A stretch of DNA of 59,355 nt, taken from the NCBI GenBank assembly GCA_002269645.1, contig NIVC01004122.1:1-59355 (forward strand), written 5' to 3'. The notes beneath the pieces were generated by a model. The model was not told the DNA's origin. It ran no database searches and worked only from the letters and a program-made list of their open reading frames with translations. Below, piece after piece: positions 31,806 to 52,472 of the stretch; within the stretch, counting starts at the first letter, position 1, and the number at the start of each line of letters is the position of its first letter. The translations under genes and the position numbers were made by a program. This DNA is from Macrostomum lignano. Taxonomy: Eukaryota.

Positions 31806-32533
31806 ATTAGACGGTGGTGGCCGTGGAGGGCCTCGTTACGCAGATCTTCGGCACCCCACGGTCCCCACTGTCGGTCCTGGGCTCGGACCCGGCCGGTGTG
31901 GTCACACTGGCTCGCGCAACCCTGCGTCACGCGAGGTGTTAGCCTGCAGCCAAAGCTGGAAGAGGCCTGTAGCTGGCTCTGCAGGCAGGAAAGAAGTTGG
32001 CAGAAGGCAGCTATCCTCACAGACAGCGCGAGCGCCCTGAAGGTAATATTCGGAAACAGCAAACACCAACACGCAGGAGAGATCAGATGGAAGCTGGAAG
32101 AGTTGAAGGAGAGGGGAAAGATTGTCGAGCTTGCCTGGATCCCAGCGCACTGCGGGCTCCCGGGAAACGAGGAGGCAGACAAAGTGGCTGCGACAGCCTG
32201 CGAGGAGGACCAGCAAGAGGCGACGGTGGGCAAGAGCGCTGTGTGACAGGCGATCGAGGCGGCAGAAGCTGAGAAAGCTAAAAAAGCTGGAGGGGCGCAC
32301 CCGCGCTGTGAAAAGACCTACAGCGGCAACCGAGCAACCATTAAGAAGACGACCTTTGAAAGCACAGGAGACGCCACCAGCTTCAGGAGAGCTAGAACTG
32401 GCCACTCGCTCGAACTGGCGAGCTACAGGAAAAGACTTGGAAAAGAAACGGACGGCATCTGCAGAAAATGCGGGCTTGAGGAGGAAAGCATCGAGCATGT
32501 CAGTGCCCAGCCACCTTCTGGAAAAGACAGGAG

Positions 32534-32791
32534 TGTTAAAGATGTTATAAGTAATCGTTTATCTTAAAATAGTCAACTTTATATTTATAGTAAGTGAATC
32601 CAAGTTTTCCTTCTAGAATTTTCTATAACAGACTGCTTAATTATATCTATGGTTTTCGACTCCCTTACCTGTACCACTAAGTTTTGTTTGAGCTACGCCA
32701 GTGCTAAATTCCATGTTAACCCTTCTTTTGCTATCTTTCTCAAAACTCAATAAACGCCGATTCATTATAATTTAACAAGGCTTTCTTAATA
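32534..32791 (+). repeat. Copia 5' LTR (TG...TA)
   Basis: Direct repeat of 36938-37195. Confidence 0.97.
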
Positions 32792-32805
32792 GGTTATGGG
32801 CCCTG
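32792..32805 (+). other. Primer-binding site of the Drosophila copia type (initiator tRNA-Met fragment)
   Basis: GGTTATGGGCCCTG directly follows the 5' LTR. Confidence 0.8.
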
Positions 32806-32945
32806 CGCCCTTCCACTGTGATCTACTGCAGTGTGAACAATAAAGCTGCTTCAGTGGCAGTGCGTCAGTCGGCGTGATTGTCAGGCTCTACCGTCTCTTA
32901 GAAAGTTCAAGCTCAGCAGTCCAGTTGTGCTGGTGGATCGACACG

Positions 32946-33887
32946 ATGTCTTTCGATGCCAAACTACTGGTTGAGAAGTTGGATAGTTCCAACTACACTG
33001 TCTGGAAGTTCAAGATGAAGAACGTCCTGATGGAGCGAGAACTTTGGGAAGTTGTTGATGGTACAGAGACACTTGCTGAGGACGCGACCAACGAGGTCAA
33101 AGTTCAGTTCAAGCGGCGTGCGAACAAAGCCCTAGCGACTATCGTATTGGCTGTTGCGGATAGTCAAATTCATCTAATTGAGGATGCAGAAACTCCGAAG
33201 GAAGCGTGGGATAAGCTTCAAGCATATTTCGAGCGGAGTTCACTGGCAAATAAATTGTTTCTTAATCGGAAACTACAAGCGCTCAAGATGGTGGAAGGTG
33301 CATCCATGCAGGAGCATGTTAATCAGTTCAAGGATATCGTCAAACGACTGTCGGCTATCGGGGCAGGTGTTCCCGAGGACTATCAAGTCACGATTCTGCT
33401 AAACAGTTTGCCGAAGTCATATGACGGGTTGATTACTGCCCTGGAATCGCGAGCGGACGACTTGACGATGAATTTCGTACTCGAGCGGCTTTTGCACAAG
33501 GAGTCAAAACGACTTGAACAGGAAAGCTGTGAACCTAGCAGCAATTCAAAGGCTCTGGTTGGATTCAAGAGGCAACAGCACCAGAGTGTCAGACCAAAAG
33601 TATGTTTTTTCTGCAATAAGCCTGGTCACATAAAGAAGCACTGTTACAAATTCAAGAATAGCCTCTCAGTGACAGGTGGATCGAACACAAATTCAAGACC
33701 ACAGGATTTGAAGAAATCCAACAGAAGGCATCAGGCGAGGATTGCAGACGCCCCAGCAAAAGACTTAAAGGACTTTTCAGCTTCAGATGAGGAAGATTCT
33801 GCATTTCCGGCGTTGTCTATGGGCACATCACGACAGCTAACGAGTCTAGTACATGGATTGTGGACTCAGGCGCAACGAATCATATGA
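32946..33887 (+). CDS. gag: Copia Gag (UBN2-type capsid region + CCHC knuckle)
   Basis: KLDSSNYTVWKFKM, A.EAWDKL, LLNSLPKSY, CFFCNKPGHIKKHC. Confidence 0.92.
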   Translation: MSFDAKLLVEKLDSSNYTVWKFKMKNVLMERELWEVVDGTETLAEDATNEVKVQFKRRANKALATIVLAVADSQIHLIEDAETPKEAWDKLQAYFERSSLANKLFLNRKLQALKMVEGASMQEHVNQFKDIVKRLSAIGAGVPEDYQVTILLNSLPKSYDGLITALESRADDLTMNFVLERLLHKESKRLEQESCEPSSNSKALVGFKRQQHQSVRPKVCFFCNKPGHIKKHCYKFKNSLSVTGGSNTNSRPQDLKKSNRRHQARIADAPAKDLKDFSASDEEDSAFPALSMGTSRQLTSLVHGLWTQAQRII

Positions 33888-36838
33888 CTAATGATCGGAC
33901 AAGTTTTGAGGAATTTGAAGATTTTTCGGTACTGGAGAACATTTCGCTAGCAGATGGACATAAGCTCGAAGCCACTGGAAAGGGAACCGTTCGGTTGTAT
34001 ATCAATACTGGTTCTGGTAAGAAATTGTGCGAGCTGAGCGACGTTCTATATGTACCACTTATGGAACAGAATTTGTTCTCAGTATCAGCAGTTACAAGAA
34101 AAGGCTTCCGTGTACAATTCAGCGACGACAAGTGTCAGATTTTGAGCGCAACTGGTAAGATTGTTGGAGAAGCTTTAAAAGTTGGCAGACTGTACAAATT
34201 GAAAGGCTTTAACCTAACTAACGAGACTGCATCTGTCGCGAGAAACAACAGCATCGACCTATGGCATCAGCGCTATGGACACCTAGGTGAGCAAGACCTG
34301 AAATCTCTAATTAATGGAAAGCAAGTGGACGGAATTGAGCTTAGCAAGGATGACGTAAAAACTGAAGGCATCAGTTTCTGCACAGCATGTGTGGAAGGAA
34401 AGCTACATCGAACGCCATTTGCAAAGGGTGAAGCGTCAAGGTCAACTGAACTATTGGGTCTAATTCACAGTGACGTGTGCGGTCCCATGAAAACTACGTC
34501 AATTGGAGGATCAAAGTATTTTGTCACATTTATTGACGACTATTCGCGCTATTGCTCAGTTTACTTCATTAAAAGCAAGTCAGAAGTCTTAGAAAAATTC
34601 AAGATCTTTCAGGCTCTCGTCACGAATCAAACAGGCAAGTCTATCAAGATTCTTCGGACTGACAATGGTGGAGAGTATACATCGGGAGAATTTGAGGCAT
34701 TCTGTGCCCGAAACGGAATCATTCACCAGACTACTGTCCCACACTCTCCTAAACAGAACGGAGTAGCCGAGAGAATGAACCGAACCTTGGTGGAGGCAGC
34801 ACGAACAATGATTGCACATGCTCATATTGGCAAGGAATTCTGGGCAGAAGCAATCTCTACGGCAGCATATCTGCGTAATCGATCAATAACGAGTGCAGTC
34901 AACAAAGCGACACCATATCAAATTTGGACCGGCAGCAAGCCGAGTGTTCAGCATTTGCGAATATTTGGATGCGTTGCCTACGCGCATGTCCCAGCTGAGA
35001 AACGTCACAAGTTTGACTCAAAAGCTCGGGAAGTCAGATTTATTGGATACTCGGAAACCTCAAAAGGATATCGTTGTTTTGATTTCCAAACACGATCAGT
35101 TTTCGTCAGTCGCGATGTAACGTTCCAAGAGTCGTGCTTCGTGAAGCAATTAGTGGAGAAGCAGGAGACACTTCAACTGAATGCAGGTACCGAACCAGCA
35201 TCGTCTGATTTCAAATGTGTTCCTGAAACTGTCGACAAGCAAGAAGTTCGGAGATCAACTCGAGAGAAGAAGCCCGTTGACAGGTACGTGGCATCCGTCG
35301 CAACACAAATTGACGAACCGAAAACTCTACAGCAAGCATTAGACAGCTCATTCTCTAAAGACTGGCAAGAGGCTGCGAACGCAGAGTACGAGTCACTGAT
35401 GGAGAACAAGACATGGAAACTGGTTGAGCTACCAAAAGGACGTCAAACTATTGGCTGTAAGTGGGTATTTCGTGTCAAGTATAAGGCAGACAACTCAGTA
35501 GACAGATACAAAGCAAGATTGGTAGTCAAAGGATACTCTCAAGAGCATGGAGTAGATTACGAGGAGACGTATGCACCAGTAGCTCGATTTACATCAATTA
35601 GAACTCTACTGACTGTTGGAGTTCAACGAGATTGGAAAATTCACCAGATGGATGTCGTAACAGCATTTTTAAACGGCAAACTAGACGAAGAAATTTACAT
35701 GGAACAACCGGAAGGATTTGTGGTTCAAGGCAAGGAAACACTAGTATGCAAACTAGAAAGAAGTCTATATGGACTCAAGCAGGCTCCTAGATGTTGGAAT
35801 CAAACTCTACATGATGAACTTTTAAGTCTTAACCTAGTGCAGGCAAAGTCAGAACCGTGTATCTATGCTAACTCTCAATCTGCGATCGGTGTGTATGTGG
35901 ACGACATTCTATTAACAGCATCTGACGACTACATGCCCGTACTGAAGCAAGAACTGCAATCTAAATTTAAGATGAAGGATCTAGGCGAATTTCACTATTT
36001 TCTTGGAATTCAAGCTACCTGGAAGAATGGTTCATTGTTTCTAAACCAAGAGCGGTATCTAAATACCATCCTTTCTAAATTCAACATGATGGACTGCAAA
36101 CCGGTATCAACACCAATGGACACAAGTGTCAAGTTCTACACTACACAGACCTGTGATGCTAAGGTGGACAAGACTATGTATCAGGCGGCAATAGGAAGTC
36201 TAAACTACGCAGCACTAGCTACACGACCAGATGTGTCATCTGCAGTGGGAGTTCTCGCGCGATATTGCTCAGACCCAACTGAACAGCATTGGAGTGGCGT
36301 GAAGCGTGTCCTGAGATATCTAAAGGGAACCATTTCATCAGGATTGGTTTTTCAGAAGGACTCGCGTGCAATCGATCTAATTGGATATTCCGATGCAGAC
36401 TGGGCTGGAGATCACAATGACCGACGTTCTACAACCGGATACATATTCAAGTTGGCTGAATGTCCGATTAGCTGGAGTAGCAAGAAGCAACAAACTGTAG
36501 CCCTATCGACGACGGAGGCCGAGTACATGGCACTCTCAGCTGCTACCCAAGAAGCCACATGGTTACAACAGTTACTACTAGATCTTCGCGTAGAAAGTCT
36601 CAAATACGTTACTATCCTAGAAGACAATCAAGGCTGTATTGCTCTAGCTAGGAATCCTGTCTTCCACAGTCGTTCTAAGCACATTGATATCCGTCACCAT
36701 TTCGTGCGTGAGAAGTTGGTCGGTGGAACTTTAAAGCTAATTTACTGTCCGTCAGAGGAGATGATCGCTGACATTCTTACTAAAGCACTGTCTAATGCCA
36801 AGTTTCAAGTGCTCAAGGAACTGATTCCTGTTCGTTAA
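33851..36838 (+). CDS. pol: Copia Pol (protease, integrase, reverse transcriptase, RNase H); in the -1 frame relative to gag
   Basis: WIVDSGAT, LWHQRYGH, HSDVCGP, QNGVAERMNRTL, YKARLV, HQMDV..AFLNG, LYGLKQAPR, YVDDIL, YSDADWAG, KHIDIRHHF. Confidence 0.97.
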   Translation, partial: TWIVDSGATNHMTNDRTSFEEFEDFSVLENISLADGHKLEATGKGTVRLYINTGSGKKLCELSDVLYVPLMEQNLFSVSAVTRKGFRVQFSDDKCQILSATGKIVGEALKVGRLYKLKGFNLTNETASVARNNSIDLWHQRYGHLGEQDLKSLINGKQVDGIELSKDDVKTEGISFCTACVEGKLHRTPFAKGEASRSTELLGLIHSDVCGPMKTTSIGGSKYFVTFIDDYSRYCSVYFIKSKSEVLEKFKIFQALVTNQTGKSIKILRTDNGGEYTSGEFEAFCARNGIIHQTTVPHSPKQNGVAERMNRTLVEAARTMIAHAHIGKEFWAEAISTAAYLRNRSITSAVNKATPYQIWTGSKPSVQHLRIFGCVAYAHVPAEKRHKFDSKAREVRFIGYSETSKGYRCFDFQTRSVFVSRDVTFQESCFVKQLVEKQETLQLNAGTEPASSDFKCVPETVDKQEVRRSTREKKPVDRYVASVATQIDEPKTLQQALDSSFSKDWQEAANAEYESLMENKTWKLVELPKGRQTIGCKWVFRVKYKADNSVDRYKARLVVKGYSQEHGVDYEETYAPVARFTSIRTLLTVGVQRDWKIHQMDVVTAFLNGKLDEEIYMEQPEGFVVQGKETLVCKLERSLYGLKQAPRCWNQTLHDELLSLNLVQAKSEPCIYANSQSAIGVYVDDILLTASDDYMPVLKQELQSKFKMKDLGEFHYFLGIQATWKNGSLFLNQERYLNTILSKFNMMDCKPVSTPMDTSVKFYTTQTCDAKVDKTMYQAAIGSLNYAALATRPDVSSAVGVLARYCSDPTEQHWSGVKRVLRYLKGTISSGLVFQKDSRAIDLIGYSDADWAGDHNDRRSTTGYIFKLAECPISWSSKKQQTVALSTTEAEYMALSAATQEATWLQQLLLDLRVESLKYVTILEDNQGCIALARNPVFHSRSKHIDIRHHFVREKLVGGTLKLIYCPSEEMIADILTKALSNAKFQVLKELIPVR

Positions 36839-36937
36839 TATGACTGCTAACTCTTTATCTAACTTTGATATTCAAGACACAATATGAACTGTTTGTACCA
36901 GTATGCACTAGTTTTTAAGCTAAACATTAAGTGGGAG

Positions 36938-37195
36938 TGTTAAAGATGTTATAAGTAATCGTTTATCTTAAAATAGTCAACTTTATATTTATAGTAAGTG
37001 AATCCAAGTTTTCCTTCTAGAATTTTCTATAACAGACTGCTTAATTATATCTATGGTTTTCGACTCCCTTACCTGTACCACTAAGTTTTGTTTGAGCTAC
37101 GCCAGTGCTAAATTCCATGTTAACCCTTCTTTTGCTATCTTTCTCAAAACTCAATAAACGCCGATTCATTATAACTTAACAAGGCTTTCTTAATA
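36938..37195 (+). repeat. Copia 3' LTR
   Basis: Direct repeat of 32534-32791. Confidence 0.97.
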
Positions 37196-37337
37196 AGGAG
37201 TTGGGCATCCAGACTCTTGGTGACTGGTGGACGGAGGAGAAGGCGGCGCACGCCTTCTGGAAGTGGTGGAAGAGGAATGGCATAGGCACAGCTTGATCCG
37301 GCAACAACAACAACAACAACAACAGCAGCAGCAACAG

Positions 37338-39225
37338 TTGCACGTGGGACATGGTGTCCGATTTACGGCGCTCTTCGACCTCCCCCGAAGGAAGAGGGTC
37401 CCCTCCGCGACGAAAACGCGGCGCCGAGTAGGAGCTGCGGGATACCCGCAGTCTAGGCGTAAAGCCCAGAGGGTACTGACTACATCGTCCAAGAGGTCGA
37501 TTACAGTGGATACGCGGACGACCTCGCCATCTGGGCCTCCGGCAGGAATATCACAGATGTCCGTGAGCGCATTCAAAGGGCCCTCCACCTTATCGAAGAG
37601 TGGGCCAATAATCTTCGCATCGAACTCAACCCTTCAAAAACTAAATACTGCCTGTTCTCTCGCAACCGAGCCGATCGAGACACCACCGTTCATCTCTCGT
37701 TGCTTGGGCGTCCTATCCCCAGTAAGCCGGCGCTGAAGTTCCTCGGGGTCTGGATTGACCGCGGACTTCTTTTCGACAAACATCTGAGCGAAATCAAGGA
37801 CAAAATGCTCCGTCGAACTGCCATCATCAAAGCTTTAGCAAACCAGGATTGGGGATGGGATCGCCTCCTCCTCCTCAAAGTCTACCGTGCTTTGGTCGAG
37901 TCGGTGATCTGGCATGCTGCATCGGCCTGGACGCCCTGGTTGTCCAAGACTCGCCTGGATGAACTTGACCGCGCTCAAAGGGAGGCGCTGCGCACCATCA
38001 CCGGCCTGCCACGATCGACCCCCCACGGAAGCTATTTACCTGGAGGCTCAGGTTGACCCTATCAGCGTTGAGGCCCGCAGGCGTGCTCTGCTCACCTACG
38101 AGAAAGCCATCCGTCGCCCTCTCAGTGACCCGTTTCGCCAGATCTGTGAAAAACACTCGAACGTCCGACTCGCGGCCAACAGAGGCCTGCGCGAACAAGC
38201 GAGGCGCATCTGCGATTCCATGATGCCGCTCCCGCGTATGCCCTTCCACCTTGCTCGCCGTCCACCCTGGACCTCACTCGTCGACCAGGGCATCAACTGT
38301 TTCACCGACCTGCCAGACCTGGGAGCCACTTCGACTGAACAAACTCTTGCAGCCATTGAGCAACGCTGCCCAGGATCCTGCACCTACTACACCGATGGCT
38401 CGGCCACCGGAGGGGTCGAAAACGGCGGAGCCGCTTGGATCTTCCTCAATCATGATGGCACCAGCCGTCGCCGCGGGCACGCAGCAGCTGGTCGCTGGTG
38501 CAACTCCTACGAAGCCGAATTAATGGCCATCAAGCTCGCCCTGGAAGACATTATCAGCTCCGAACCGCGCCATGCCGTCAAACTGACCGACAGCCTGAGC
38601 GCCATCGCCGCCATCAAAACTGACCGTCCAACCCTCAACCTGCGGCTTGAGCAAGTTAAAGATCTCCTCGCTAACGCAGCCATGCACACAAAGATTACCC
38701 TGCAATGGGTTCCGGGACATTCGGGAGTGCCCGGTAACGAACTGGTCGACGCAGAGGCCAAGCTCGCGGCCACACTGTCTCAAGACGAGTCAGAAATTAC
38801 CCTTGCAGCTGCTAAAGAGCGCATCCGCCATCATCTCAAGTACCGCCCTACCCTTCATGGGCACTTGGCCGAGGTCTATGGTAAAACGATCTCCTTCCAT
38901 CAGGGACCGCGTCGCCAACAAATCCTCGTGGCGCAGGTCAGAGCAGGCCACTGCCCTGACTCCAACTATTATCGCAACCGCACCGGCATCACCGAAGGCG
39001 GCCCCTGCCGACCTTGCCTGGATGTTCCGGACCAATTTCATTTCTGGACCTGCCCTAAGCTCGAAGCTAATCGGCGCAACATCGGCGTCACTAGTCTGAG
39101 TGACTTTGCACGTGGTGACTTGGTGGCGCAGCTCCTGGGAGCCGTCGACTGGCGGCCCCTGTGAGTTGCTCACCGCAGACAGCAACAACAACAACAGCAG
39201 CAGCAGCAACCGCAACAACAGCAGC
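37338..39225 (+). mobile_element. LINE fragment B (I-group/Ingi-like): RT C-terminal half + RNase H, ending in a (CAA/CAG)n tract
   Basis: YADD at 37511, LNPSKT, KFLGV.ID, YTDGSATGG, SYEAEL.AI, LTDSLSAI, WVPGHSGVPGNE; stop at 39164; one frameshift near 38030; CAR repeats at 39180-39225. Confidence 0.92.
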
Positions 39226-39795
39226 CTACTGTGACGGCTCGGCTGCCGGGGGCACGTCCTGCGGAGGCACCGCGGCCGTCGTCACCGTCGGCGACCCTGA
39301 GAATCCGACCATCCAGGACACCTTCCGTCAACGCGGCGCTCCCTCCACATCGTCTTTCGAGGAGGAGGTCCGAGCCGCTGCTCTCGCCATGAACTGGATC
39401 AATTAATCCGTCACCTTGGGTGCCATCAGCATCTGCACGGACAGCCAGGCCCTCCTCCGTGCGCTTGCCAGCGGCAGCCCCACCATCAGAGCCCAGCTGC
39501 CCTCCTCCACCGTTGACATCATCTGGCAATGGGTCCCCGGCCACCAAAACATCACCGGTAACTAACTCGCCGACCTCGCCGCCAAGGAGGCCACCGCGCT
39601 GGACCTCCCTCCCCCTGCCCGGTCAGCCTGCGCAGCGCTAAAAACGCTATCTTCCGTGTCCTCCAAGACCCACCGATCAGCCACGACCGCTCTCGCCTCA
39701 CCTACAGCCAGCTCAACCGCCAACTTGAAGATGGCTTCATCACCGATCGTGCTGACGCTGTGCTTCTCGCCCGCATACGCTCGGGCCACTGCAAT
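39226..39795 (+). mobile_element. LINE fragment C (degenerate RNase H region)
   Basis: YCDGSAAGGTS, SSFEEE, ICTDSQALL, WVPGH..I.GN*LAD.AAK, LARIRSGHC; contains internal stops. Confidence 0.85.
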
Positions 39796-40869
39796 AACAA
39801 TCAGTTAGCTGAAACAGTGGGCATTCTCAGCATAATGGGAGGCGATGAAAATCAGTCAGCCAAAAGTACACACATGCCTTTGCACTGCTAATACGAGCTA
39901 AGCCAACAGCCCGTCACTCCTTTCTGCACACAAATCAGCCTAGATTAAATGAAATACACTGGTGAAATAGGCAGGGATGTTGATAAAATCTCAGTTAAGT
40001 CAGACAAATTGGCAGTCGCGAAGCTTCTCTTTCAGTGAGAAGGGGAATTCCGAGGCAAAAAAATGTTTTTCGAATATTTAATGCGAGATAACGCGAAAAC
40101 ACCATAAAATTGGTTGAGGCTTTCAGTCTGTGGAGCGTTCTACACGGACAGTATGGATAAGAGATTTATTACCCGGTACATAGTGATGACTTTGACATTC
40201 GATACAGGTGGATGATGATGATGATGACGATTTAGTAATAGTGATGGATATAGGTGGCGGGATGGATAACGGATTGGTATGTGGCACTGTGTGGGTTAAA
40301 TTCTGCATGCCAAAATAAAATAATTTGAACTTGAACTATTTTGTTTACGATGAGCCGTCCCTCATGTGCTGAGATGGCTAGCTGAACGAGTGGCGAACAT
40401 TCTCTGGCAAACAATTGATGTTCCAGATGAAGACAAGGTGTCCAGCAAGTCTTCGTTCAAGGAGACTGCAATTACTTTTGTCGAGTTTCTCAGCAGTGTT
40501 TTTCGTGACGCCACGAATGAAGACGGCCCAACTACGAATCCGCTGCATTTTGAAAGTTGACTGAGCTGCTTGTTGATAAGTGGCTTCCTCTGGCTCCTAT
40601 TTGAAACCATTTTGTGTCTAAAGCACCAAGCCAATTTGAGCTGACGAAATCGTGGTAAATGTGACTGCGGAAAATTACTTTAGGAGCATCAAACATGATG
40701 TGTGCACTGCAAGGCAGAAAGGGACTTCGTGCACCAGACTTTATGACTGCATTTCTAGAGGGGACTAGACTTAGACAGAAATCAACAAGCATTATCAAAT
40801 TCGGTATGCCACAAGCTGTTACCACCAAGAAGCGATCGGAGGATTCATCACGGGCTGAGGACGTTTAAT

Positions 40870-41770
40870 CCCATAGAGTATCTACGGCGGGAAGCGAGAA
40901 GCTTCAGGTTCGGCCGAAGCTCTGGTCTTACTCAGCACGCGAGGTAGCTGCGGGGATGCCGACATGGTCCAAAACTGCAGCAACCCCTAGTCCAGTGCCA
41001 CCACTGCGCCCCCATCAAAAACTTGGCCGAGTATGCGGATGCGGATGCTGTCCCGGTTGCGGCTCCGCCCTCGACCATGAAAACCATCAGTGAGGCGGAA
41101 AAAACAACTCGCTTCAAGTCAGCAGGAAGCTGCGCGGACCACCCGCGGAATTTCCGGGGTGGAATTCCTGCATCTTAACATGCACGACTGCATCGCGGCC
41201 TCGAGCAACCTGATGCAGGTGGCGAATTTCACTAAACCTGGTGTTATCTTACTTCAGGAGCCCTATGCGAAGAAATCTAAGATTTTGAATATTCCTGCTG
41301 GTTTCGACTGTTTCCTAGGACCCCTTGAAACCAAAGAGCATCCATATTCGTGCATACCCATCTCAAAGCTTTGCATAGACCAGGTCTTTTAGACAGAGAC
41401 ATCTGCGTAATTTAATGCAATCACATTATCACCAACCATATGGTCATTACAGCCTCGATTTCTGACGATGGCAAAGCAGTTCTACCAATCCGTCTAACTT
41501 CACTTCCGCATCGTCCTGCTTGGAGTCAATGGTCCTCTCGGGTCATGGCTATTTTTTGAGTCATCCTTACCTCCAGAAAAAATCTATTGTGAGAATCGCC
41601 TATTCTGCCTCTCCGGTGTTCAAAATGCGGAGGACTTCATTTGCGAATTTCCTCGCTTTTACTCAGGACAGGCTCACCTGCCTCGGCCCAAACCACTACC
41701 TAAGAACTACCGGGCGAGCCAGCATCCACCTCCTCGACTATATCCGGATGCCCGGAACCCCCTGCAGCTA
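40870..41770 (+). mobile_element. Decayed LINE remnant (ORF1 Cys/His end + ORF2 AP-endonuclease start)
   Basis: FLHLNMH....A..NL....VILLQEPY is a typical APE N-terminus. It is preceded by degenerate CG..QNC..CHHC. Confidence 0.6.
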
Positions 41771-43129
41771 AGTCGTGATTCAATAGTATTGCTTTGACTC
41801 TGTCCGACTATGAGCGTTATGATGCACACAGGGCGTCAAAGAGAGTATCTAATATCCGTCATATAGCAATGCAGCGGGACGTTTATTCTCATAATTATTT
41901 AACCGGTTTAATAACTACGAAATCTAGTGACCCTGGTTGGATGTATTTATTAACCGTGGTTACCACAGCATTCAAAATGTGACATAGTGACACGATGAAC
42001 TTTGCTATAGGTTGCATGCACTGTAGTGTTGACTCACTAGCAGTGGAGTTGTTATTGATCGGCTTAGAGATTGTATTTTATTCCACCCCACCCCATGCGC
42101 GCGTTTGAATCTGTCTGCACCCACCACCTCAGTGCTAAATAATAAATGTTAACAGCCTAGCTCTCAAGCGAGCACCTTTTACTCACTCCTGCAATTCCAC
42201 ACTTCTGCCTCGCTTAACAAAGTTATCACACAAAACTGTGCAGTCGTGCTCCATCGCTGACTGAATAACAAATTCGCGCAAAAACTCGTATAGCCAAAAT
42301 ATCAACCTTCCTTCGCTTTCTGAGGCACCATATCTTAAATAAATATCTTAAAATTGTTTGGCAGTCATACCTGCCCATTATTTGGGTCACCGATTTCTAG
42401 TGGTTGCTGATAAATAATTGTTTTTTTTATTTCACCAGCGTGTCTCGAAAACTATTTTGGAATACATTTCATTAATTTAGAAAGTCCTAAACATATGAGC
42501 ATAGATATGGAATATTTTATGCAAGAACCATCTGATGCATTCAGCAAGTCGGTACGCATGTTTACGCAAAAGAACACCGAAAATGTTAGAGAAATTGCTT
42601 ACTTATTTAACTTTATTATAACATTCAATATCATTGAAAAATGCTACAAAAACATGACGGTATTTTTGTCTGAGACCTATTAAGGCTGTCTTGGTTCACA
42701 AGATCAACTGAATACATACTGATTCTGGACGGTTCAATCAGTCGGTCGTCGGTCCGTCGTTTGGAGACGGTTGACTGTACTTTAAGGAGCAATTATTTGA
42801 TGCTGAATCAATCAGCGCCCCCCGTTGGGGAGCCAACAAAGAATATACTAAAATTTTTTTAATACACCCATGGACTACTCAAATACCGGGACGAGAAAAT
42901 AGGCAAATCATAACAATTTTTTACGAGGCTGGTTTGTTATTAGCAGCGAGGATGACTGGCTGACTTATTTGCATGGAGCGATACTGTGTTACTTAATTGT
43001 TGTTTACGGTTATTGTTTATCAGTTACAGCTTGTGCTACAGCTACGAGCTTATATCGACTGCAGGCTAGCAATAGACGCTGGCATTATAGCAGCTAAGTT
43101 TCTTTTTCTGCTTCTGTTGTTGGCTTAAA

Positions 43130-43264
43130 ATGCCAAGAAAGTGCAGCGTTGTTGGCTGTAAGTCAAATTACGAGTCCGAAGGATTAGTTACGAAAGTCCA
43201 TCTGTTTCCAAAGGACTCGGTTGAGCGAGAGCGATGGAGAAAAGCCCTACCGAACACTCTGGAG
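43130..43264 (+). CDS. THAP zinc-finger N-terminal exon (THAP gene or P-element-like transposase), remainder absent from the window
   Basis: MPRKCSVVGCKSNY..VHLFPKD..RERWRKALP followed by the donor GAG|GTACG. Confidence 0.8.
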
Positions 43265-43356
43265 GTACGCAATATTTACTGTAAGGTTAATTGTGCTAAT
43301 ATCTTTTTGTGAGTTACGCAGCGCGTTTTTCCTTTATTCCGCCTTTTAGTCCGTGA

Positions 43357-43385
43357 CTAGCAATCAACGCCCCCCGTTGGGGAGC
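43357..43385 (-). terminator. Helitron 3' terminal hairpin + CTAG
   Basis: 7-bp stem with one G-T pair and a 3-nt loop, 8 nt upstream of CTAG|T. Confidence 0.8.
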
Positions 43386-43459
43386 AAAAGAAATGCAATA
43401 CAGGTTTTTTTAATAAGCAACATGTAGCTAAGCCTTGAAATCTTAAAAAATCTCCTGTC

Positions 43460-43690
43460 AAACTTCTAACCATAACCCCAACCCTAACCATAACCCTAAA
43501 TTTAATATTTTGTTCACGAGTTTTTGCATGATGCTTGCATTATTTTTTGCATGACGCTTCCATAAACATTTTAATAGGCTACATGAGCTAAGTTATAAGC
43601 TACCATAACCCTAGCCCTAAGCCAAATCTTAACGCTATACCCTGAACCTAACACTAAACCTTGAAACCCTAACACTAACCCTACAGCCTG
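43460..43690. repeat. Degenerate telomere-like (TAACCC/CCCTAA) tracts in the Helitron subterminal region
   Basis: CTAACCATAACCCCAACCCTAACCATAACCCTAAA; TAACCCTAGCCCTAAG; AAACCCTAACACTAACCCT. Confidence 0.7.
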
Positions 43691-43719
43691 ACATTTTCAT
43701 AAGTTTGTGAAGCGCTTAT

Positions 43720-45065
43720 GCACCAAATTTTTGTGAACAGAATATTCTCAGTGAAATGAAATATTTGAAGCTTTATTTATTCCCGGCATAGCACATCACT
43801 ACAAAGAACGTGCATATACGCGTACCATTTAATACTTGCATACTTTAAGCGTAGGATGATACGAAACTGCGTGAATAAATTCGCCGAACTATTAAACATT
43901 TCTGTTAGTTTCACGATTATTATACACAGTACATGTACAAAGTAACAGTACTGTTCAACTGTACTGTTACGAGCTACAACAAACAAAAAACAACAAACGA
44001 CCGGTACGTGCTTTTAATTAAATTTTAAACAACCGAAAATTGACGTTCAGCAGTTAAAACAATATTTAAACCAACACTTGCATTTATTCAAATGATATGA
44101 TATGATCTTCTGCTGCTAATACGAGCGTAGCAGGTGAAAATTTGCAATGATGTAATAATTTATAACAAAAGGATAGACTGTTGCTTCAGCAGATGGTGCC
44201 ATCGACAAGCAGCCAGTATAGCTTTTTAGCGGTACAAAAATGTACATGTATATGCCATCCTGACTACCTGCCGACTCGCGTCACTGCTCAATTGCATGCA
44301 TTGGGTGTAAGCAAAGGTAGAGACACTCATTCTCAAACCAAACATTAAGTCGCTCCGCTCTGCTTAAGGCTGCTACAGAGCTTGACTGCAAATGCTCCTT
44401 TTAGAGTCTGGAACCACAGGGTATATAGAGCAGCTCCTATATCCCATTTAAAAACTCTTTTAGCCCAGTTAAGATGCAGTCAACCTACTCTCAATGAGGG
44501 CTGCTTCATAAATTCCAATTATACATACAGGTTTGACCTGCTTATACCTGTACTATATCTGTTTACTGACTGTATTTTATGGTCTGTTCAGCGACTGTAT
44601 TAGTGACTGCATTATTGTCTGTTTAGAGGCTGTATTGTCTGTTAAACGACTGTATTGTCTGTTTAGAGGCTGTATTGTCTGTTAAACGACTGTATTGTCT
44701 GTTTAGAGGCTGTATTGCCTGTTTAGAGACTGCATTGTCTGTTTAGAGGCTGTATTGCCTGTTTAGACATTGTATTGTCTGTTTAGAGACTATATTGTCT
44801 GCTTAAGGCTGTATTGTCTGTTTAGAGGCTGTATTGCCTGTTTAGAGGCTGTATTGCCTGTTTAGGGATTGCATCATTGTCTGTTAAAAGACTGTATTTA
44901 TTCTGTAATTTCTACTTTAAGTACTGTTACATTTATGTCCTATGAGTATAAGGAGGAACTTACGAAACATTCCTCGTAAATAGGATTTACTCAATGCACT
45001 CTCTCAGGGCTATCAGTTCATTGAGACTCTACGCGACTTTGATTTCACTCTCAGCCATCAGACGC
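43720..45065. repeat. Copy 2 of the internally duplicated Helitron block (direct repeat of ~50060-52410), with ~13 copies of the 20-bp repeat at 44612-44875
   Basis: 44232-44717 is identical to 50562-51047; the flanks are homologous but diverged. Confidence 0.92.
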
Positions 45066-45102
45066 TCGGGTCAAAAAAGTGGCACGCGCCAACTGTGGCA
45101 AC

Positions 45103-46671
45103 TCACTGATACGAAGTGCTGTTCTGTACGCTGTGATCATCGAACGGCATTCTGCTCGACTCATCCTGACCGTCGACACCTCCACTGCGGTGAAACTGAC
45201 TCCGGTCATCACCCGTCGACACTCGTCTGTATCGAATCTGCGAGAAGAAAAATTTTATAAGGATATAAAATATGTGTGACAAGAAAGTCCTATTAAGCAT
45301 GAATACATAAAAGCAACACAATAAGTACTGTTCTCTTTGCTATTCAATTTGCGATTTTCAAAATAAATAGCTTAACTGAACACCTGTCTAACTTGGTAAC
45401 CTAACAAACTTTATTATATTTAATCTTAATACTAAAAGTGGTGCGTTGTTTGTCTGTATAATCAACTAAATTTGTAGAAAATCACTCACCTTTTTGCCAT
45501 TTCCGAAGTCCCTCACAATTTCCTTCGAGTGTTTGTCATAAAACTCAAACAAGGCAGCAGGCTCCCGAATTATGGTCACACTTTCGTCTCCAATCTCATC
45601 AGCACCAAGTCCTGGAGTAGGCACTGGAGCGGGCACAGGTTCAAACCGGGTATCGCCTTCCTTTGCATTCCTATACCAGTCAGCCAAGACTCTGGCTTCA
45701 CCATCGTCACTGTTGCATTTTACGTCAGAGTTCGAGCATCCCAACGTGACGGAGCCCGAATACTCCTGCACCTTTGCTCTTCTTATGGACAAAACATCGC
45801 CGATGTTCCACCTGTCCACTTGAGCTGAGGACGAACCCCAAAACGTGCAGCTTACAGAGCCGAAGGTTCGGTCAATCAAAGTCACTTTGGCTACGTTAAC
45901 CTTTTTCCCAGCACGCGTTCGGACTTCTTCAGACGGTTGCCTGGCGTCGATCACTCCAAGCACATCGACGATTCTGATAGTGAAAGGGAGCAATACTTTT
46001 TTTAACTATTTGCACACTAACTTAAGCATCACATTAGATTTCTATTTGTACACTAACAGGAGCATCATGAAGCTAATAACCCAGGCTTCGTACAGTGTTG
46101 CGATGATAAATATTTTCAAACACAAGACAAACTAACTGTCACCCAAAAACACGATTACATGTACTTTCACTCCGCGATATTTGAGCACTAATACATGACG
46201 AAAACTACTAAATCAATTAGTCACTCACCTGTCCAATCCAGTCTGTTGCAGTTGATTAATGCTAGTGTAATCAATTACTGGATCTCGAGCAACCGGCACT
46301 TCGTTGCTTCTATAGATGAAGCCCTTGGAATCCACGGAAACGGTCATCTCAAGTGGATTGTCCGTACACTTGTACTCTGGCTTGGCAGTCTTCACCATCC
46401 CGCCGGATATGCGAACGGCTTCAGCATCGTTGCATACTTCCCAGATAGCTTGCAAATCCTTACCGAAGACGCTGACTCGCATCTCAGATGAGTCGTCCAC
46501 CAAGATGAACGAAAACACTTGGCCCTGACCTTTGTTGTTATTATACGTGTGAACGTCTTTCAGGTTCGTCACAAGGCCAGTGACAGGCGTAGGCATTTGC
46601 CCAACTGTCAGACCGGCAATCCCATCCTTCTTCGACTTCTTTTTCAAAGGTGACTCTGAATAAGAGGCCAT
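45103..46671 (-). CDS. RPA70-like tandem OB-fold ssDNA-binding protein carried by the Helitron (~350 aa)
   Basis: Exons 46229-46671, 45490-45973 and probably 45103-45237, with phases consistent. Motifs VFSFILVD.S.EMRVS.FG, IVDVLGVI, TLID.T..V..TFWG and L..WY resemble RPA70 DBD-A/B. The N-terminal KKKSKK is NLS-like. Confidence 0.82.
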
Positions 46672-47099
46672 TTTGCAGAAAATATTATTCAACAATTGAA
46701 AAAAGAACTGATAAAAAGTATCAATCAAACTTTTTCTAAGCAATGATAAGCTTTAACTGTAAGACAACAAAATTGGCTCAACAAATCACAAGCTATATAT
46801 ATGTAGAAATAAAAGTAGCCACGAAAAAAACACCACCTCCCCTCCAGCCCAGTACATTGTACTCAATTTTGCATTCATTTTTACTTTATTACACAATCTA
46901 ATTGGCTGGACACACAACCCAACCCAATCACTCCAGTGCCCAGCATTAAAGCACACACTGCACCCTCTGATGTACGCTAAGGTCTCCTCACTTTTCTCAC
47001 CTAATCCTTTTGTTTGTTTGCTATCTCGTTTTATGGTGACACAATTCTCACCGACTGACTCAGCAAGTGTAGGCAATACTTTAAGAGTTCGCGGCCGCG

Positions 47100-47420
47100 T
47101 GTACTTCACTGCACAAACAAAACTTGTATGGCGCGGCTGACTGGTTGAGCCATTTTCGCACCTTCTAAGCCGGGAAAGAAAAATAGGCGACCCTCCTCAA
47201 GTCAGGCTGCATGGCCACCAGTACGCTAGACAATTTTTAGGCCAATCGCCGCTCTAAAGCCCCGACCTGCACAACCGACCAATAGGAAGCCTCAGACTTG
47301 TACAGAAAACCACCGTAAGGCTCAGCGAAGCGACGACGCACAACCCATAACCCCTAATTTTATTCGCCCCTACACCTCAGTTTCAGTGCCTATATAGTCT
47401 GATATAGTCTGATTCATATA
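47100..47420. promoter_or_regulatory. Putative bidirectional promoter between the RPA-like and RGG/knuckle genes
   Basis: GC-richer island between divergent genes, with CCAAT at 47242 and 47279 and CCTATATAG at 47389. Confidence 0.4.
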
Positions 47421-47494
47421 TTTAGAGTCATATATTTCTATATTAGAGTCTCAACAAATCATATTTTCTCAATCAAATCATCAACAAATCAACA

Positions 47495-49802
47495 ATGCAT
47501 ATTACACAAATATTTGGTGGCGGCGGCGGCGGTAGGCGAGGCGGCGGTCAGCGCGGCGGCTGGCAGCGCGGCAGGGGCGGCCCACGCGGAAAGAGCAGTG
47601 AGTACCTTCCTAAGACACTGTAAATCTTGTGCTTTGAGTACATTCGAGTATAGTCTTAAATTTTATCTAATTGTAGCCTGTTACTGACTTTCATGCTACT
47701 CGTATTATTACTGATAAATTTTGCAAAAATTTCCCTTCTTTTAATTGCCAGTCGTTTGTTTCTTCTGTGGAGGCCGCCACCGCGTTGCCAGCTGCAACGC
47801 GATGAAGGCCGCCGCCCGCCTTCTGCAGCAGCAACAGCAGCAGCAACAGCAGCTCGGTGGATTCGCTGGATCCGCGGCTTCCTGTCGGACCGTCACAACG
47901 CAGTCCGCTGGGTTAACGCCACGAGCCGCAACAGAGTCTTCCGCGAAGGTCTGCCACAGGGCAGTGTGCTAGCGCCCACGCTGTGGAATATCTATGTCAA
48001 CGATTTAGCCCAAGCAGTCGCCGAGGCGAACCCTTTGGTTAGCCTCAGTCTCTACGCCGATGACTCGGCCTTACTGGCGACCGCTCGCACACTCGACATC
48101 TGTGCCAGAGAACTCCAACCAGCCCTGGATGCAGTGGCCGACTGGTGCCGAGATTGGAAAGTCTCCATTAGTACTGGGAAATGCTGCTACTCCACCTTCA
48201 CTCTAGCGGCAAATGAAAACAACGGCAAACGGAGAGTGAACCTCCAGATCAACGGCGACAAGCTTGCCTTTCGATCCAACACCGACCTTCCTGGGACTCA
48301 CTCTTGACGACAGCCTAAGTTTCAGCCACCATGCATCAAAGATCCGTAAAAAGATGGCCGCCCGCAGAAGACCTCTCACTGCCCTCGCTACCAGATCGGC
48401 CGGTGCGGACAGTCAGATCCTCCGCATGGCTTACATCGCCACCGTTCGCTCTGTTGCCGACTACGCGTGCGGGGTCTGGGGGTCTTTCACTGCAGCCAGC
48501 TCTAAGCTGCTGATCGACCGCCAACAGCACAGCTGTGCGCGGATCATCACTGGGTGCCTCCAACTTACTCACATCCGGGACCTGCTTGCGGTGGCGAACC
48601 TGTCGCCCTTCAGCCATCTGGTGCTACAACGTAGTGCGACGCTCAGAGAAAGAATCCTACGTCTCCCGCAGGACACTCCAGCACTTCAGGTCGCCAAAAT
48701 GGACACCCGACCACGACTGAAGAATCGAGCCTTTGAGAGCCACCAGAGAACACCGAGAGACCCAAAGGACATCGTCACCGTCCTCCACGACTACCAGCGA
48801 GAACACCGTGGTTGCTGGCGCCGCGTTAGCCAAGAGCTCGACAGACAGGGGCTGCTCAACGGCCCCACCAGGGAGCCCGCTCCGCAGCTCCAGCCGCCGT
48901 GGACGGCCCACGAAGCGATCACTTTCGACCTCAGTTTGGCTACGCAGTGCAGCCGCAGCCAGCCCCAGAGCCTCCGCAGCGATACTGCACTGAGGTACCT
49001 CGAGGAGCGCGGCTCCCACCCGGTCAGCGTTTGGACTGACGGCTCGGCCGCCGGCGGCACATCGGACGGCACCAGCGCAGCGGTGATCATCACCCCATGC
49101 TGGGGTCGGGTCGTCACCAGCGCTGCAGGGAACATCTGCAGCAGCACCCAGGCGGAACTCCAAGCCATACTGCTTGCCATCCAGAATACCAGAGAGCATC
49201 AATGTATCGACATCTTCACTGACTCCCAGGCGGCCATTTACAACATCATGGCGGGCCAGCGCAGCAACAGCAGAATCGTCTCCGAAATTTGGAACCAGAG
49301 TAGCGATCACTCCATCCGCATCACCTGGATACCGGCTCACTGCGGCATCCCCATGAACGAACGCGCAGATAGGGCGGCAAGACTGGCGACCGCAGATCAG
49401 AGCGACCATGGTGTCCCCATCATGGCAGCCAGCGCTTACCTCTGCCGGGAAAGACGTGATCTAGACCTCGAGCTTTGGGGCCGTAAGGCGCCATGGCCAA
49501 GACTCCCAACCTTGCCGAGGAAATTTGAGGTCCTGGTCAACCAGCTCCGCGCCGGCTGCAGCAACCTTGCCGCCGCCACTAGACTCCGACTCGGCCTGTC
49601 CGACTCCGACGTGTGCCCGGACTGCGGAGCTCGCGACACCGAGCAGCACATTCTTTTCGACTGCCCACGAGGGTTCGCGGCCCGCCCCGGCGAACAAGAC
49701 GCACTCCTGGTTGACGCGAGCCTCACCATCAACCTTCTTCACAGGCTGGGGCGCATCTAGCGCCCCCGTCTCTTGCAGCTCAGCTGACATCGAGACGTGC
49801 GG

Positions 49803-49833
<31 letters not shown>

Positions 49834-49971
49834 CAACAGCAGCAGCAGCAGCCGCAGCAGCAGCCGCAGCAGCCGCAGCAACAGCAGCAGCCGCAGCAAC
49901 AGCAGCAGCATCAGCAGCCGCAGCAACAGCAGCCGCAGCAACAGCAGCCGCAGCCAATGAATGAATTGTAA
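47495..49971 (+). pseudogene. Small RGG-box/CCHC-knuckle/polyQ-P gene (110 aa reconstructed), disrupted by LINE D
   Basis: Exon 47495-47597 encodes MHITQIFGGGGGGRRGGGQRGGWQRGRGGPRGKS. A GT-AG intron ends at 47751. Exon 2 encodes IVCFFCGGRHRVASC..LLQQQ. Removing 47854-49843 restores the frame into Q/P repeats ending PMNEL*. Confidence 0.75.
47854..49831 (+). mobile_element. LINE D (5'-truncated I-group/Ingi-like: RT + RNase H + Cys/His finger), (GA)n tail, 12-bp TSD AGCAACAGCAGC
   Basis: GLPQGSVLAP, YADD, FLG.TLD, WTDGSAAGG, FTDSQAA, WIPAHCGIPMNE, CPDC...H...C; stop at 49760; TSD at 47842-47853 and 49832-49843; one frameshift near 48270. Confidence 0.93.
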
Positions 49972-52410: not shown

Positions 52411-52472
52411 ACGCCAGACACTTCTCAAACACATCTCTTGGACTTGAACTCACGAATAGCGTCCGAAATTGC

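What the first reader, a model, noticed from the sequence alone, without database searches (positions are those of the whole stretch)
37290..49860. RNase H-bearing LINEs that appear to target (CAA/CAG)n microsatellites, including a polyQ-coding exon
LINE B starts immediately after the CAR tract ending LINE A, and LINE C starts immediately after the CAR tract ending LINE B. LINE D, whose own tail is (GA)n, sits inside a CAG/CAA polyQ tract with a 12-bp TSD, AGCAACAGCAGC. Three of three resolvable 5' junctions abut CAR triplets. Microsatellite-specific LINEs are known for other repeats, but a family homing to glutamine codon repeats would be a directed mutagen of polyQ genes. Where its own tail is CAR it would also self-stack (inference).
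Basis: partly seen in the sequence, partly recalled or inferred. Interest (0 to 1): 0.72.

Follow-up and report, generated by a model that had tools for sequence, protein, structure and literature searches.

The report
Stacked LINE fragments with CAA/CAG tails
Four decayed, unrelated-family copies of an RNase H-carrying LINE retrotransposon sit at CAA/CAG repeats because two or three of them carry such a repeat as their own tail and later copies landed in earlier tails; this is ordinary LINE behaviour with an unreported repeat type, and only one copy truly interrupts a glutamine-coding repeat.

Summary
The sequence facts hold. LINE B (37338-39225) starts directly after the CAA/CAG tract that ends LINE A. 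LINE C (39226-39789) starts directly after the tract that ends B. LINE D (47854-49833, (AG)14 tail) splits a CAG/CAA tract with a 12-bp duplication, and removing it restores a 111-codon ORF.

The tally of "three of three" is really three of four. A's 5' end can be resolved: it lies in a Gypsy reverse-transcriptase fragment with no CAR.

A-D are four mutually distant families (25-34% aa identity) of one group. Full-length relatives carry an APE endonuclease, RT and RNase H. Tails are lineage-specific in relatives from other organisms:
- (CAA)n or (CAAA)n on the B/C side;
- (GAA)n, (GGAA)n or (GA)n in D's clade;
- poly(A) elsewhere.

So the CAR tracts ending A and B are their own tails.

My best reading is that CAR-tailed copies primed reverse transcription in earlier CAR tails, giving a head-to-tail stack. 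A single event with template switching is not excluded.

Four of four D-clade relatives sit in non-CAR sites, with 12-13 bp duplications that mostly start AGC in the three where a duplication could be found. That weak preference, or chance, explains D. A dedicated polyQ-homing family is not supported. The finding is a new member of a known kind, of modest interest.

The parts
30700..31805 (+). Gypsy-like pol fragment (protease/RT up to '...GLQVHLKKFEF'). It is the upstream flank of LINE A.
   Evidence: Read from the translation; no family search was run on it. The RT reading frame stops matching at about 31800-31806, where the LINE A RNase H motif begins.
31806..32533 (+). LINE A, part 1. It is 5'-truncated at the RNase H motif ('TLDGGGRGG') and contains the RNase H and CCHC region. 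It carries at least 2 frameshifts and 1 stop.
   Evidence: Pfam RNase_H 1.7e-6; tblastn to relatives from 31911; motif reading.
32534..37195 (+). Copia-type LTR retrotransposon inserted into LINE A. LTRs are at 32534-32791 and 36938-37195. The 5-bp TSD AGGAG is at 32529-32533 and 37196-37200.
   Evidence: LTR pair 99.6% identical; gag-pol ORFs 32874-33887 and 33860-36838; sequence.
37201..37301 (+). LINE A, part 2: the C-terminal codons, a stop, and a 5-nt 3' UTR.
   Evidence: The reading frame '...WKRQE|LGIQTLGDWW...NGIGTA*' is continuous across the Copia insertion.
37302..37337 (+). CAR tail of LINE A, (CAA)7(CAG)3CAACAG. It is also the 5' flank of LINE B.
37338..39179 (+). LINE B body, from mid-RT ('CTW DMVSDLRR...') through YADD, RNase H and CCHC. 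The stop ends at 39164, followed by a 15-nt 3' UTR with a hairpin. There is a frameshift near 38030, and the first ~150 nt are decayed.
   Evidence: Pfam RVT_1 5.4e-7 and RNase_H 1.6e-13; tblastn; 5'-end alignment; hairpin z = -4.2.
39180..39225 (+). CAR tract after LINE B: CAG(CAA)4(CAG)4CAACCG(CAA)2(CAG)2C. It is B's tail, possibly followed by the rest of A's tail, and it is the 5' flank of LINE C.
39226..39789 (+). LINE C. It begins at the RNase H motif 'YCDGSAAGG' and breaks off at '...RIRSGHC'. Its 3' end and tail are missing. It carries 2 stops and 1 frameshift.
   Evidence: Pfam RNase_H 1.9e-10; 43% and 40% aa to P0031 and P0028; no continuation found.
47495..47597 (+). Exon 1 of a small ORF (RGG-rich).
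   Evidence: ATG at 47495 and GTGAGT donor at 47598.
47752..47853 (+). Exon 2, upstream part: a CCHC-like knuckle followed by the start of the polyQ tract (CAR 47826-47852). The last 12 nt are the upstream TSD copy.
47854..49805 (+). LINE D body, from mid-RT ('RWIRWIRGFLSDR') through YADD, RNase H and CCHC. The stop ends at 49760, followed by a 45-nt 3' UTR with hairpins. There is one frameshift near 48285.
   Evidence: Pfam RVT_1 1.3e-15 and RNase_H 6.7e-17; 40% aa to the Amphibalanus protein P0004; hairpin z = -2.9.
49806..49833 (+). (AG)14 tail of LINE D. Its last AG overlaps the TSD.
49832..49971 (+). Downstream TSD copy (49832-49843), then the rest of the polyQ/P-coding tract, ending in PMNEL and a stop.
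   Evidence: Joining the two flanks gives the 111-aa ORF MHITQ...QPQPMNEL*.

Best explanation
A, B, C and D are old, 5'-truncated copies of four distantly related families. They belong to one group of LINEs built as APE endonuclease, reverse transcriptase, RNase H and a C-terminal CCHC motif.

In this group the RNA ends in a short 3' UTR, often a hairpin spanning the stop codon, followed by a lineage-specific microsatellite tail. This part is shown. For A and B the tail is (CAA/CAG)n. For C the same is inferred from its closest relatives.

The proposed mechanism is inferred from established LINE biology. Target-primed reverse transcription starts where the nicked target strand can pair with the tail. 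A CAR-tailed RNA is therefore favoured at CAR DNA. The commonest CAR DNA is the tail of an earlier copy. B therefore landed in A's tail and C in the tract after B, building a head-to-tail stack.

D is a separate case.
- Its clade uses (GA)n or (GAA)n tails and makes 12-13 bp duplications. In three of the four known sites these begin AGC, and in the fourth AC.
- A CAG repeat is a dense array of AGC, which raises the odds of a hit about 7-11 fold.
- D's landing in the glutamine-coding tract is otherwise a one-off, not evidence of homing.
For: Domains and group:
- RVT_1 and RNase_H are found in the window copies.
- Full-length relatives add Exo_endo_phos / Exo_endo_phos_2 at the N-terminus.
- A-D share only 25-34% aa identity.

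Tails follow lineage (rough NJ tree):
- (CAA)5 in L017 and (CAA)>=5 in L020, the closest relatives of C.
- (CAAA)4 in L018, the best blastp match to B at 32% aa.
- A CAA/GAA/CAG mix in L010.
- In D's clade: (GAA)n in L014, L016, L019 and L001, and (GGAA)n in L003.
- Poly(A) in L021 and L022.

Shared 3' layout: stop codon, a UTR of 5-28 nt, then a CAR-type tail, in A, B, L020 and L010.

Hairpins just before the tail have z = -2.2 to -4.2 in B, D, L003, L016, L020 and L010.

TSDs:
- L014: AGCTCGCCAAAC.
- L016: AGCTCCATCCTGG.
- L019: ACTCAATATCTG.
- D: AGCAACAGCAGC.

AGC density puts 1.6-2.7% of candidate sites in the tract, against 0.24% of bases.

Literature:
- Tail repeats correlate with the first TSD base (PMC6007223).
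- The I element ends in TAA repeats that are needed for precise initiation, and stringent-type LINEs have 3' hairpins (PMC3747384).
Against: - No copy of any of the four window families was found outside the window, so the preference rests on two stacked junctions (B and C) plus D.
- C's tail is missing, so it is inferred.
- A, which is CAR-tailed, has a non-CAR 5' flank. The full-length CAA-tailed L017 lies in AT-rich DNA with no CAA visible upstream.
- The downstream end of the stack is lost, so A's TSD cannot be checked.
- The apparent repeat of A's last 15 nt inside B's tail (14/15) is uninformative in such low-complexity sequence.
- Disabling mutations per kb are similar in the three: A about 3.5, B about 2.6, C about 5.3. 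This fits one event as well as three.
- Even with an AGC preference, D's position is only a ~2% event.
Confidence: 0.5

Rival explanations
1. A-B-C arose in one event. The reverse transcriptase copied C RNA to a break, jumped to the 3' tail of a B RNA, copied it to a break, and jumped to the tail of an A RNA. Only then was the cDNA joined to the target, the Gypsy fragment. No insertion into a pre-existing tail took place.
For: - Each junction is a complete tail followed at once by a truncated body, with no extra bases.
- Only the outermost 5' junction (A) touches non-LINE, non-CAR DNA.
- Decay is similar in A, B and C.
- The truncation points fall at two shared hot spots, as expected if RNAs break or the enzyme stalls at fixed places.
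- Template jumping by LINE reverse transcriptases is established for R2 (own knowledge).
Against: - It needs RNAs of three families, at 25-34% aa identity, in one complex.
- It cannot explain D, which is a standard single insertion with a TSD.
- The downstream end needed to test for a single TSD is lost.
Confidence: 0.2
2. The endonucleases of this LINE group recognise CAA/CAG repeats as such, so the elements home to CAR microsatellites, including polyQ exons, independently of their tails.
For: - Three of four resolvable 5' junctions in the window are at CAR, across different families. They include D, whose tail is not CAR.
- All large CAR tracts in the window are occupied.
- TSDs of D-clade elements tend to start AGC, the unit of a CAG repeat.
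Against: - Four of four D-clade relatives with readable 3' junctions are in non-CAR DNA: L001, L014, L016 and L019.
- A is in a Gypsy RT.
- L017, L018 and L022 show no CAR beyond their own tails.
- The endonuclease domain is absent from every window copy, so nothing about it can be read here.
Confidence: 0.12
3. The association is passive. Repeat-rich, recombination-poor junk DNA accumulates LINE fragments and microsatellites together, and rearrangements brought the fragments side by side. D's position is pure chance.
For: - The window is a transposon graveyard. It holds Gypsy, Copia and Helitron sequences, another LINE fragment at 40860-41790, and dozens of minisatellites.
- C is broken at its 3' end by an unexplained rearrangement.
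- Passive accumulation was proposed for Waldo-A/B at CA repeats (PMC3812793).
Against: - The junctions are exact to the base, all in the same orientation, and each is tail-to-5'-end.
- D has a clean 12-bp duplication and a restorable ORF.
- Random placement gives 0.24% per insertion for the polyQ tract.
Confidence: 0.1

Closest known systems
Drosophila I factor (I clade of non-LTR retrotransposons)
   Same: - Domain order: APE endonuclease, RT, RNase H and a C-terminal CCHC.
- A trinucleotide-repeat 3' tail, (TAA)n, rather than poly(A).
- The tail repeats are needed for precise initiation of reverse transcription (Chambeyron et al. 2002, cited in PMC3747384).
   Different: - The tails here are (CAA/CAG)n, (GA)n or (GAA)n.
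- Clade membership by RT phylogeny was not tested.
- Head-to-tail stacking is not a described hallmark of I (own knowledge).
Microsatellite-specific APE-type LINEs: Waldo (ACAY)n and Mino (AC)n, Kibi (TC)n and Koshi (TTC)n, Dong (TAA)n
   Same: Copies are flanked by one microsatellite type. Tandem head-to-tail copies separated by the repeat are also seen in these families (own knowledge of Kojima & Fujiwara 2003/2004). Some of the elements end in the same repeat that they target.
   Different: - CAA/CAG is not among the targets listed in the 2013 review (PMC3812793).
- Specificity here is unproven: 3 of 4 junctions in the window, and none of the resolvable relatives.
- Those families are defined by most copies being in the repeat.
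Stringent-type LINEs with a 3' hairpin plus repeat tail (eel UnaL2, (TGTAA)n; CR1/L2 group)
   Same: A hairpin just upstream of a short tandem-repeat tail. Tail repeats are thought to pair with the target and to allow slippage (PMC3747384). Tail repeats also correlate with the first TSD base (PMC6007223).
   Different: These are different clades, with no RNase H domain in L2/CR1. The function of the hairpin was not tested here, and covariation could not be assessed.
Tail-into-tail insertion and head-to-tail arrays (Alu/L1 into older A-tails; Zepp of Chlorella; HeT-A/TART)
   Same: A new copy primes on the tail of an older one, which gives same-orientation stacks of 5'-truncated elements (own knowledge).
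   Different: Those use poly(A) tails or chromosome ends. Here the shared tail is CAR, the stacked elements belong to different families, and there is no evidence of a chromosome end.
Template jumping by R2 reverse transcriptase
   Same: It would produce tail-to-5'-end chimeras without target duplications between the units (own knowledge).
   Different: It has been shown in vitro for an RLE-type element. Nothing here distinguishes it from sequential insertion.

Membership tests
APE-type non-LTR retrotransposon with RNase H (I-superfamily-like: I / Nimb / Ingi / LOA / Tad1 / R1) | Reverse transcriptase domain with YADD. | tested here: met
   RVT_1 in B (5.4e-7) and D (1.3e-15). YADD is read in both. 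A and C are truncated downstream of the RT.
APE-type non-LTR retrotransposon with RNase H (I-superfamily-like: I / Nimb / Ingi / LOA / Tad1 / R1) | RNase H domain C-terminal to the RT. | tested here: met
   RNase_H (PF00075) in A, B, C and D, with E-values from 1.7e-6 to 6.7e-17.
APE-type non-LTR retrotransposon with RNase H (I-superfamily-like: I / Nimb / Ingi / LOA / Tad1 / R1) | N-terminal apurinic/apyrimidinic-type endonuclease. | tested here: inconclusive
   It is absent from all four window copies, which are 5'-truncated. It is present (PF03372/PF14529) in full-length relatives at 29-37% identity.
APE-type non-LTR retrotransposon with RNase H (I-superfamily-like: I / Nimb / Ingi / LOA / Tad1 / R1) | C-terminal CCHC motif (C-x2-C-x7-H-x4-C) with no restriction-like endonuclease after it. 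| tested here: met
   B has CRPCLDVPDQFHFWTC, D has CPDCGARDTEQHILFDC, and A has CRKCGLEEESIEHV..C. Only about 30-40 codons follow before the stop.
APE-type non-LTR retrotransposon with RNase H (I-superfamily-like: I / Nimb / Ingi / LOA / Tad1 / R1) | Placement in a named clade by RT phylogeny against reference elements. | not testable with these tools
   No reference LINE library is available. The only named relatives are uncharacterised Amphibalanus amphitrite proteins. The NJ tree of session hits contains no reference elements.
Microsatellite-specific LINEs (Waldo, Mino, Kibi, Koshi, Dong type) | Most copies are flanked on both sides by the same microsatellite. | tested here: inconclusive
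   In the window, B, C and D are, and A is not. In the relatives, none of those with readable flanks is (L014, L016, L019, L001, L017). No second copy of any window family was available.
Microsatellite-specific LINEs (Waldo, Mino, Kibi, Koshi, Dong type) | A fixed insertion position within the repeat unit. | tested here: inconclusive
   The junction registers are ...CAACAG|B, ...CAGCAGC|C and ...CAGCAGC|D. With three sites in low-complexity sequence, no conclusion is possible.
Microsatellite-specific LINEs (Waldo, Mino, Kibi, Koshi, Dong type) | Endonuclease with sequence-specific cleavage of the repeat. | not testable with these tools
   The domain is absent from the window copies, and the test is biochemical.
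Stringent-type LINE 3' end (hairpin plus tandem-repeat tail) | A tandem-repeat tail that is conserved within a lineage. | tested here: met
   Tail type follows lineage in 14 elements.
Stringent-type LINE 3' end (hairpin plus tandem-repeat tail) | A stable stem-loop just upstream of the tail. | tested here: inconclusive
   Six of ten 3' ends fold better than shuffles (z from -2.2 to -4.2). A, L014, L017 and L018 do not. The sequences are too divergent for a covariation test.

The most novel reading that the evidence does not exclude
This RNase H-bearing LINE group has a real, graded attraction to CAG/CAA DNA through two routes.
- CAR tails anneal to CAR targets.
- The first nick prefers sites where the duplication starts AGC.

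CAR microsatellites, glutamine-coding repeats among them, would then be insertion hot spots in the host genome.

In addition, the pairwise identical 5' ends could mean that these elements spread mainly as fixed, 3'-coterminal sub-length RNAs. The pairs are A with C at the start of RNase H, and B with D at the RT 'RWI..FL.DR' motif. The L010/L006 family starts 12-14 codons away from the second site.
Probability: 0.15. Interest if true: 0.6.

Novelty: new member of a known kind. Interest (0 to 1): 0.33.

Why it matters
If the tail-directed reading is right, the finding adds (CAA/CAG)n to the short list of repeats that LINEs both carry and seek. It also shows unrelated families sharing a tail and therefore stacking on one another.

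The stronger claim would link transposon activity to the evolution of glutamine repeats. That claim is a LINE group that preferentially breaks polyQ-coding tracts. It rests on a single insertion, in an ORF that may itself be Helitron cargo.

The practical value is for annotation. CAR tracts next to RT/RNase H fragments in this genome should be read as LINE tails, not as independent microsatellites or coding polyQ.

Tried and rejected
1. Looking for the window's own genome.
- A search with D's ORF gave only 3 hits, none near-identical.
- An exact-product look-up of B's ORF found nothing.
- No second copy of any of the four families could therefore be collected.

2. Scans of public contigs.
- The metagenome scan with a 4-sequence profile gave 9 short loci.
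- The prokaryote-genome scan gave 2 useless fragments.

3. A retracted observation. I first took 'AACAACAAC' at the 5' edge of the L010 element as a CAA target. It is RT coding sequence (ITTTT) shared with a second copy, L006.

4. The TSD of B inside A's tail. There is a 14/15 match, but any CAR tract gives such matches about half the time, so I rejected it as evidence.

5. The Gypsy fragment or the rest of C downstream of 39790. Neither was seen, so the stack's 3' boundary is lost. The search for the rest of C used tblastn. The Gypsy check was only a by-eye reading of six-frame translations.

6. The idea that the CAR tracts are internal polyQ linkers of one long LINE. I rejected this because A's stop codon and C-terminus lie directly upstream of B's CAR flank.

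7. Rfam and tRNA scans of the window gave nothing.

8. Full-text searches for LINEs with CAA tails or targets found no relevant paper. That is absence from the open-access library, not proof of novelty.

9. A named clade (I, Nimb, Ingi, LOA) could not be assigned, for lack of reference sequences.

Full report
**What is there**

The window is eukaryotic and animal-like. It has a THAP exon near 43130, TTAGGG-type degenerate repeats and dozens of minisatellites.

The region of the finding contains four fragments on the + strand that encode RT and/or RNase H.
- Pfam gives RVT_1 plus RNase_H for B and D, and RNase_H for A and C.
- The four share only 25-34% amino-acid identity with one another. They are four families, not one.

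A profile built from them and a few relatives retrieved 80 proteins.
- The full-length ones add an N-terminal apurinic-type endonuclease (PF03372/PF14529).
- The group is therefore endonuclease, RT, RNase H and a C-terminal C-x2-C-x7-H-x4-C motif.
- The closest named relatives are uncharacterised proteins of the barnacle Amphibalanus amphitrite (about 40% to D).
- No reference LINE set was available, so I could not name the clade.

**Anatomy and junctions**

LINE A:
- It begins at about 31806 with the RNase H motif 'TLDGGGRGG', inside a Gypsy-like RT fragment.
- It is split by a young Copia element at 32534-37195. The Copia has LTRs 99.6% identical and a TSD of AGGAG.
- It resumes at 37201 and ends in a stop, 5 nt of UTR, and (CAA)7(CAG)3CAACAG at 37302-37337.

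LINE B:
- It starts at 37338 in mid-RT and runs to a stop ending at 39164.
- It has a 15-nt UTR and a CAR tract at 39180-39225.

LINE C:
- It starts at 39226/7 with 'YCDGSAAGG' and breaks off at 39789.
- No continuation was found.

LINE D:
- It starts at 47854 in mid-RT and has a stop ending at 49760, a 45-nt UTR and (AG)14.
- It is flanked by AGCAACAGCAGC on both sides.
- Joining the flanks gives a 111-codon two-exon ORF. The ORF has an RGG-rich region, a CCHC-like knuckle, and polyQ/P ending in PMNEL*.

A's 5' junction is resolvable and is not at CAR, so the tally is three of four.

**Is it more than chance?**

- Every CAR tract of 27 nt or more in the window touches a LINE end. The only free ones are 12 and 15 nt.
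- The 12-mer TSD occurs five times in the downstream tract, so it proves little by itself.
- Three D-clade relatives have clean 12-13 bp duplications, which makes D's duplication credible.

**Whose are the CAR tracts?**

I read the 3' ends of relatives fetched from public contigs.

On the B/C side:
- L017 ends (CA)4(CAA)5CAG.
- L020 ends (CAA)>=5 after a 14-nt UTR.
- L018 ends (CAAA)4.
- L010 ends in a 57-nt CAA/GAA/CAG mix after a 28-nt UTR.

In D's clade:
- L014 ends (GAA)5.
- L016 ends (AGA)7.
- L019 ends (GAA)4.
- L001 ends (GAA)3.
- L003 ends (GGAA)n.

L021 and L022 end in A-runs.

A rough NJ tree groups the tail types by lineage. Six of ten 3' ends fold into a hairpin just before the tail, better than shuffles do.

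This is the architecture of stringent-type LINEs and of the I element with its TAA repeats (PMC3747384). The CAR tracts ending A and B are therefore their own tails, and C very probably had one.

**How the stack arose**

The simplest account is tail-directed insertion. A CAR-tailed RNA primes best where the nicked target can pair with it. The commonest such DNA is an older CAR tail.

A link between tail repeats and the first base of the duplication is documented for other LINEs and SINEs (PMC6007223).

I could not separate this from one event with template switching, for four reasons:
- The junctions carry no extra bases.
- The downstream end of the stack is lost.
- Decay is similar in A, B and C.
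- TSD-like matches within CAR tracts are uninformative.

**D and the polyQ tract**

D's clade is not CAR-specific.
- L014 sits in a mariner-like transposase (read from the translation).
- L016, L019 and L001 sit in unrelated sequence.

The four known duplications are AGCTCGCCAAAC, AGCTCCATCCTGG, ACTCAATATCTG and AGCAACAGCAGC.
- Three of the four start AGC.
- The leading A or AG also pairs with the purine tail.

A CAG repeat is an array of AGC. With that preference the tract holds 1.6-2.7% of candidate sites in the window, against 0.24% of its bases. This helps, but D's position remains an unlikely single event.

The ORF it interrupts lies head to head with an RPA-like OB-fold gene. It also lies between two copies of a Helitron-associated segment, with a Helitron Rep/helicase further on. 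It may be transposon cargo rather than a host gene.

**Comparison with what is known**

The microsatellite-targeting APE-type LINEs listed in a 2013 review use ACAY, AC, TC, TTC and TAA (PMC3812793). My full-text searches found no CAA/CAG case.

The present elements work like tail-guided, stringent-type LINEs. Whether they qualify as microsatellite-specific is untested, because no further copies of the window's families were reachable.

**An unexplained extra**

The 5' ends coincide in pairs across families.
- A and C both start 1-2 codons before the RNase H 'xTDGS' motif.
- B and D both start 2-4 codons before the RT 'RW(I)..FL.DR' motif.
- Two copies of the L010/L006 family share one 5' end 12-14 codons further on.

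With uniform truncation this would be roughly a 1e-4 coincidence. A is not at CAR, so microhomology with CAR targets cannot be the whole answer.

**Verdict**

Self-stacking on CAR tails is likely, and polyQ homing is not shown.
- This is a new member of a known kind, of modest interest.

Noticed in passing
window 31800-31806 and 39226 (A, C); 37338 and 47854 (B, D); L010 ~1631 and L006 ~576: The 5' truncation points coincide pairwise across unrelated families. A and C start at the RNase H 'xTDGS' motif. B and D start within about 6 nt of each other, before the RT 'RW(I)..FL.DR' motif. Two copies of another family (L010 and L006, 76% identical, different flanks) share one 5' end 12-14 codons downstream of that site. 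This suggests pause or break hot spots, or fixed sub-length RNAs.
   Followed up: partly
window 32534-37195: An apparently intact Copia-type LTR retrotransposon. It has gag and pol ORFs, LTRs 99.6% identical and a 5-bp TSD AGGAG. It is inserted inside LINE A and is the youngest element in the region.
   Followed up: partly
window 52300-58000 (-), 45466-46743 (-), 43724-44898 and 50067-51226: Helitron Rep/PIF1-type helicase coding sequence, with stops and introns, lies on the minus strand. An RPA-like OB-fold gene (REPA_OB_2, 3.5e-13) is also on the minus strand. Two 86%-identical ~1.2-kb segments each end in a 20-bp minisatellite (TATTGTCTGTTTAGAGGCTG). The interrupted polyQ ORF lies between these segments.
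   Followed up: partly
window 43466-43499 and 43600-43690: Short degenerate CCCTAA-type (TTAGGG) telomere-like repeats lie about 3.7 kb downstream of the LINE stack, just upstream of the first Helitron-associated segment. They are probably interstitial, with no sign of a chromosome end.
   Followed up: no
window 40860-41790: Another LINE fragment on the + strand. It has the start of an endonuclease ('FLHLNMHDC...LLQEPY') and a degenerate CCHC C-terminus with most of the body deleted. It has no microsatellite tail and was not hit by the A-D relatives.
   Followed up: no
window 18751-19548 (-): A RING-finger-like ORF (CPICQE...CPLDR) with a short QQQQQ run encoded by a 15-nt CAG/CAA tract (19015-19029). 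This CAR tract is not occupied by any LINE.
   Followed up: no
window 1-22000: An unusually dense series of long minisatellite arrays, with periods of 17-48 bp (and 143 bp), up to 62 copies, and strong local GC skew. The first 2 kb have 63% G+C. Nature not examined.
   Followed up: no
L010 3566-4775 (metagenome contig Ga0049107_10008674): Directly after the CAA-rich tail of the RNase H LINE comes a repeated element (also present in L006) that ends in a CAR-like tract (4172-4200). This is followed at once by a 5'-truncated fragment of a different LINE that ends ...TTATTAA CAGCAGCAACAACAA. It may be a second head-to-tail stack on CAR tracts, in another organism. CAGCAGCAACA is shared at both ends of the last fragment.
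   Followed up: partly
window 43131-43270: A THAP-domain-like exon (MPRKCSVVGCKSNYE...), identified by eye. It is flanked by two copies of a 'CAGCGCCCCCCGTTGGGGAGC' motif at about 42810 and 43365.
   Followed up: no
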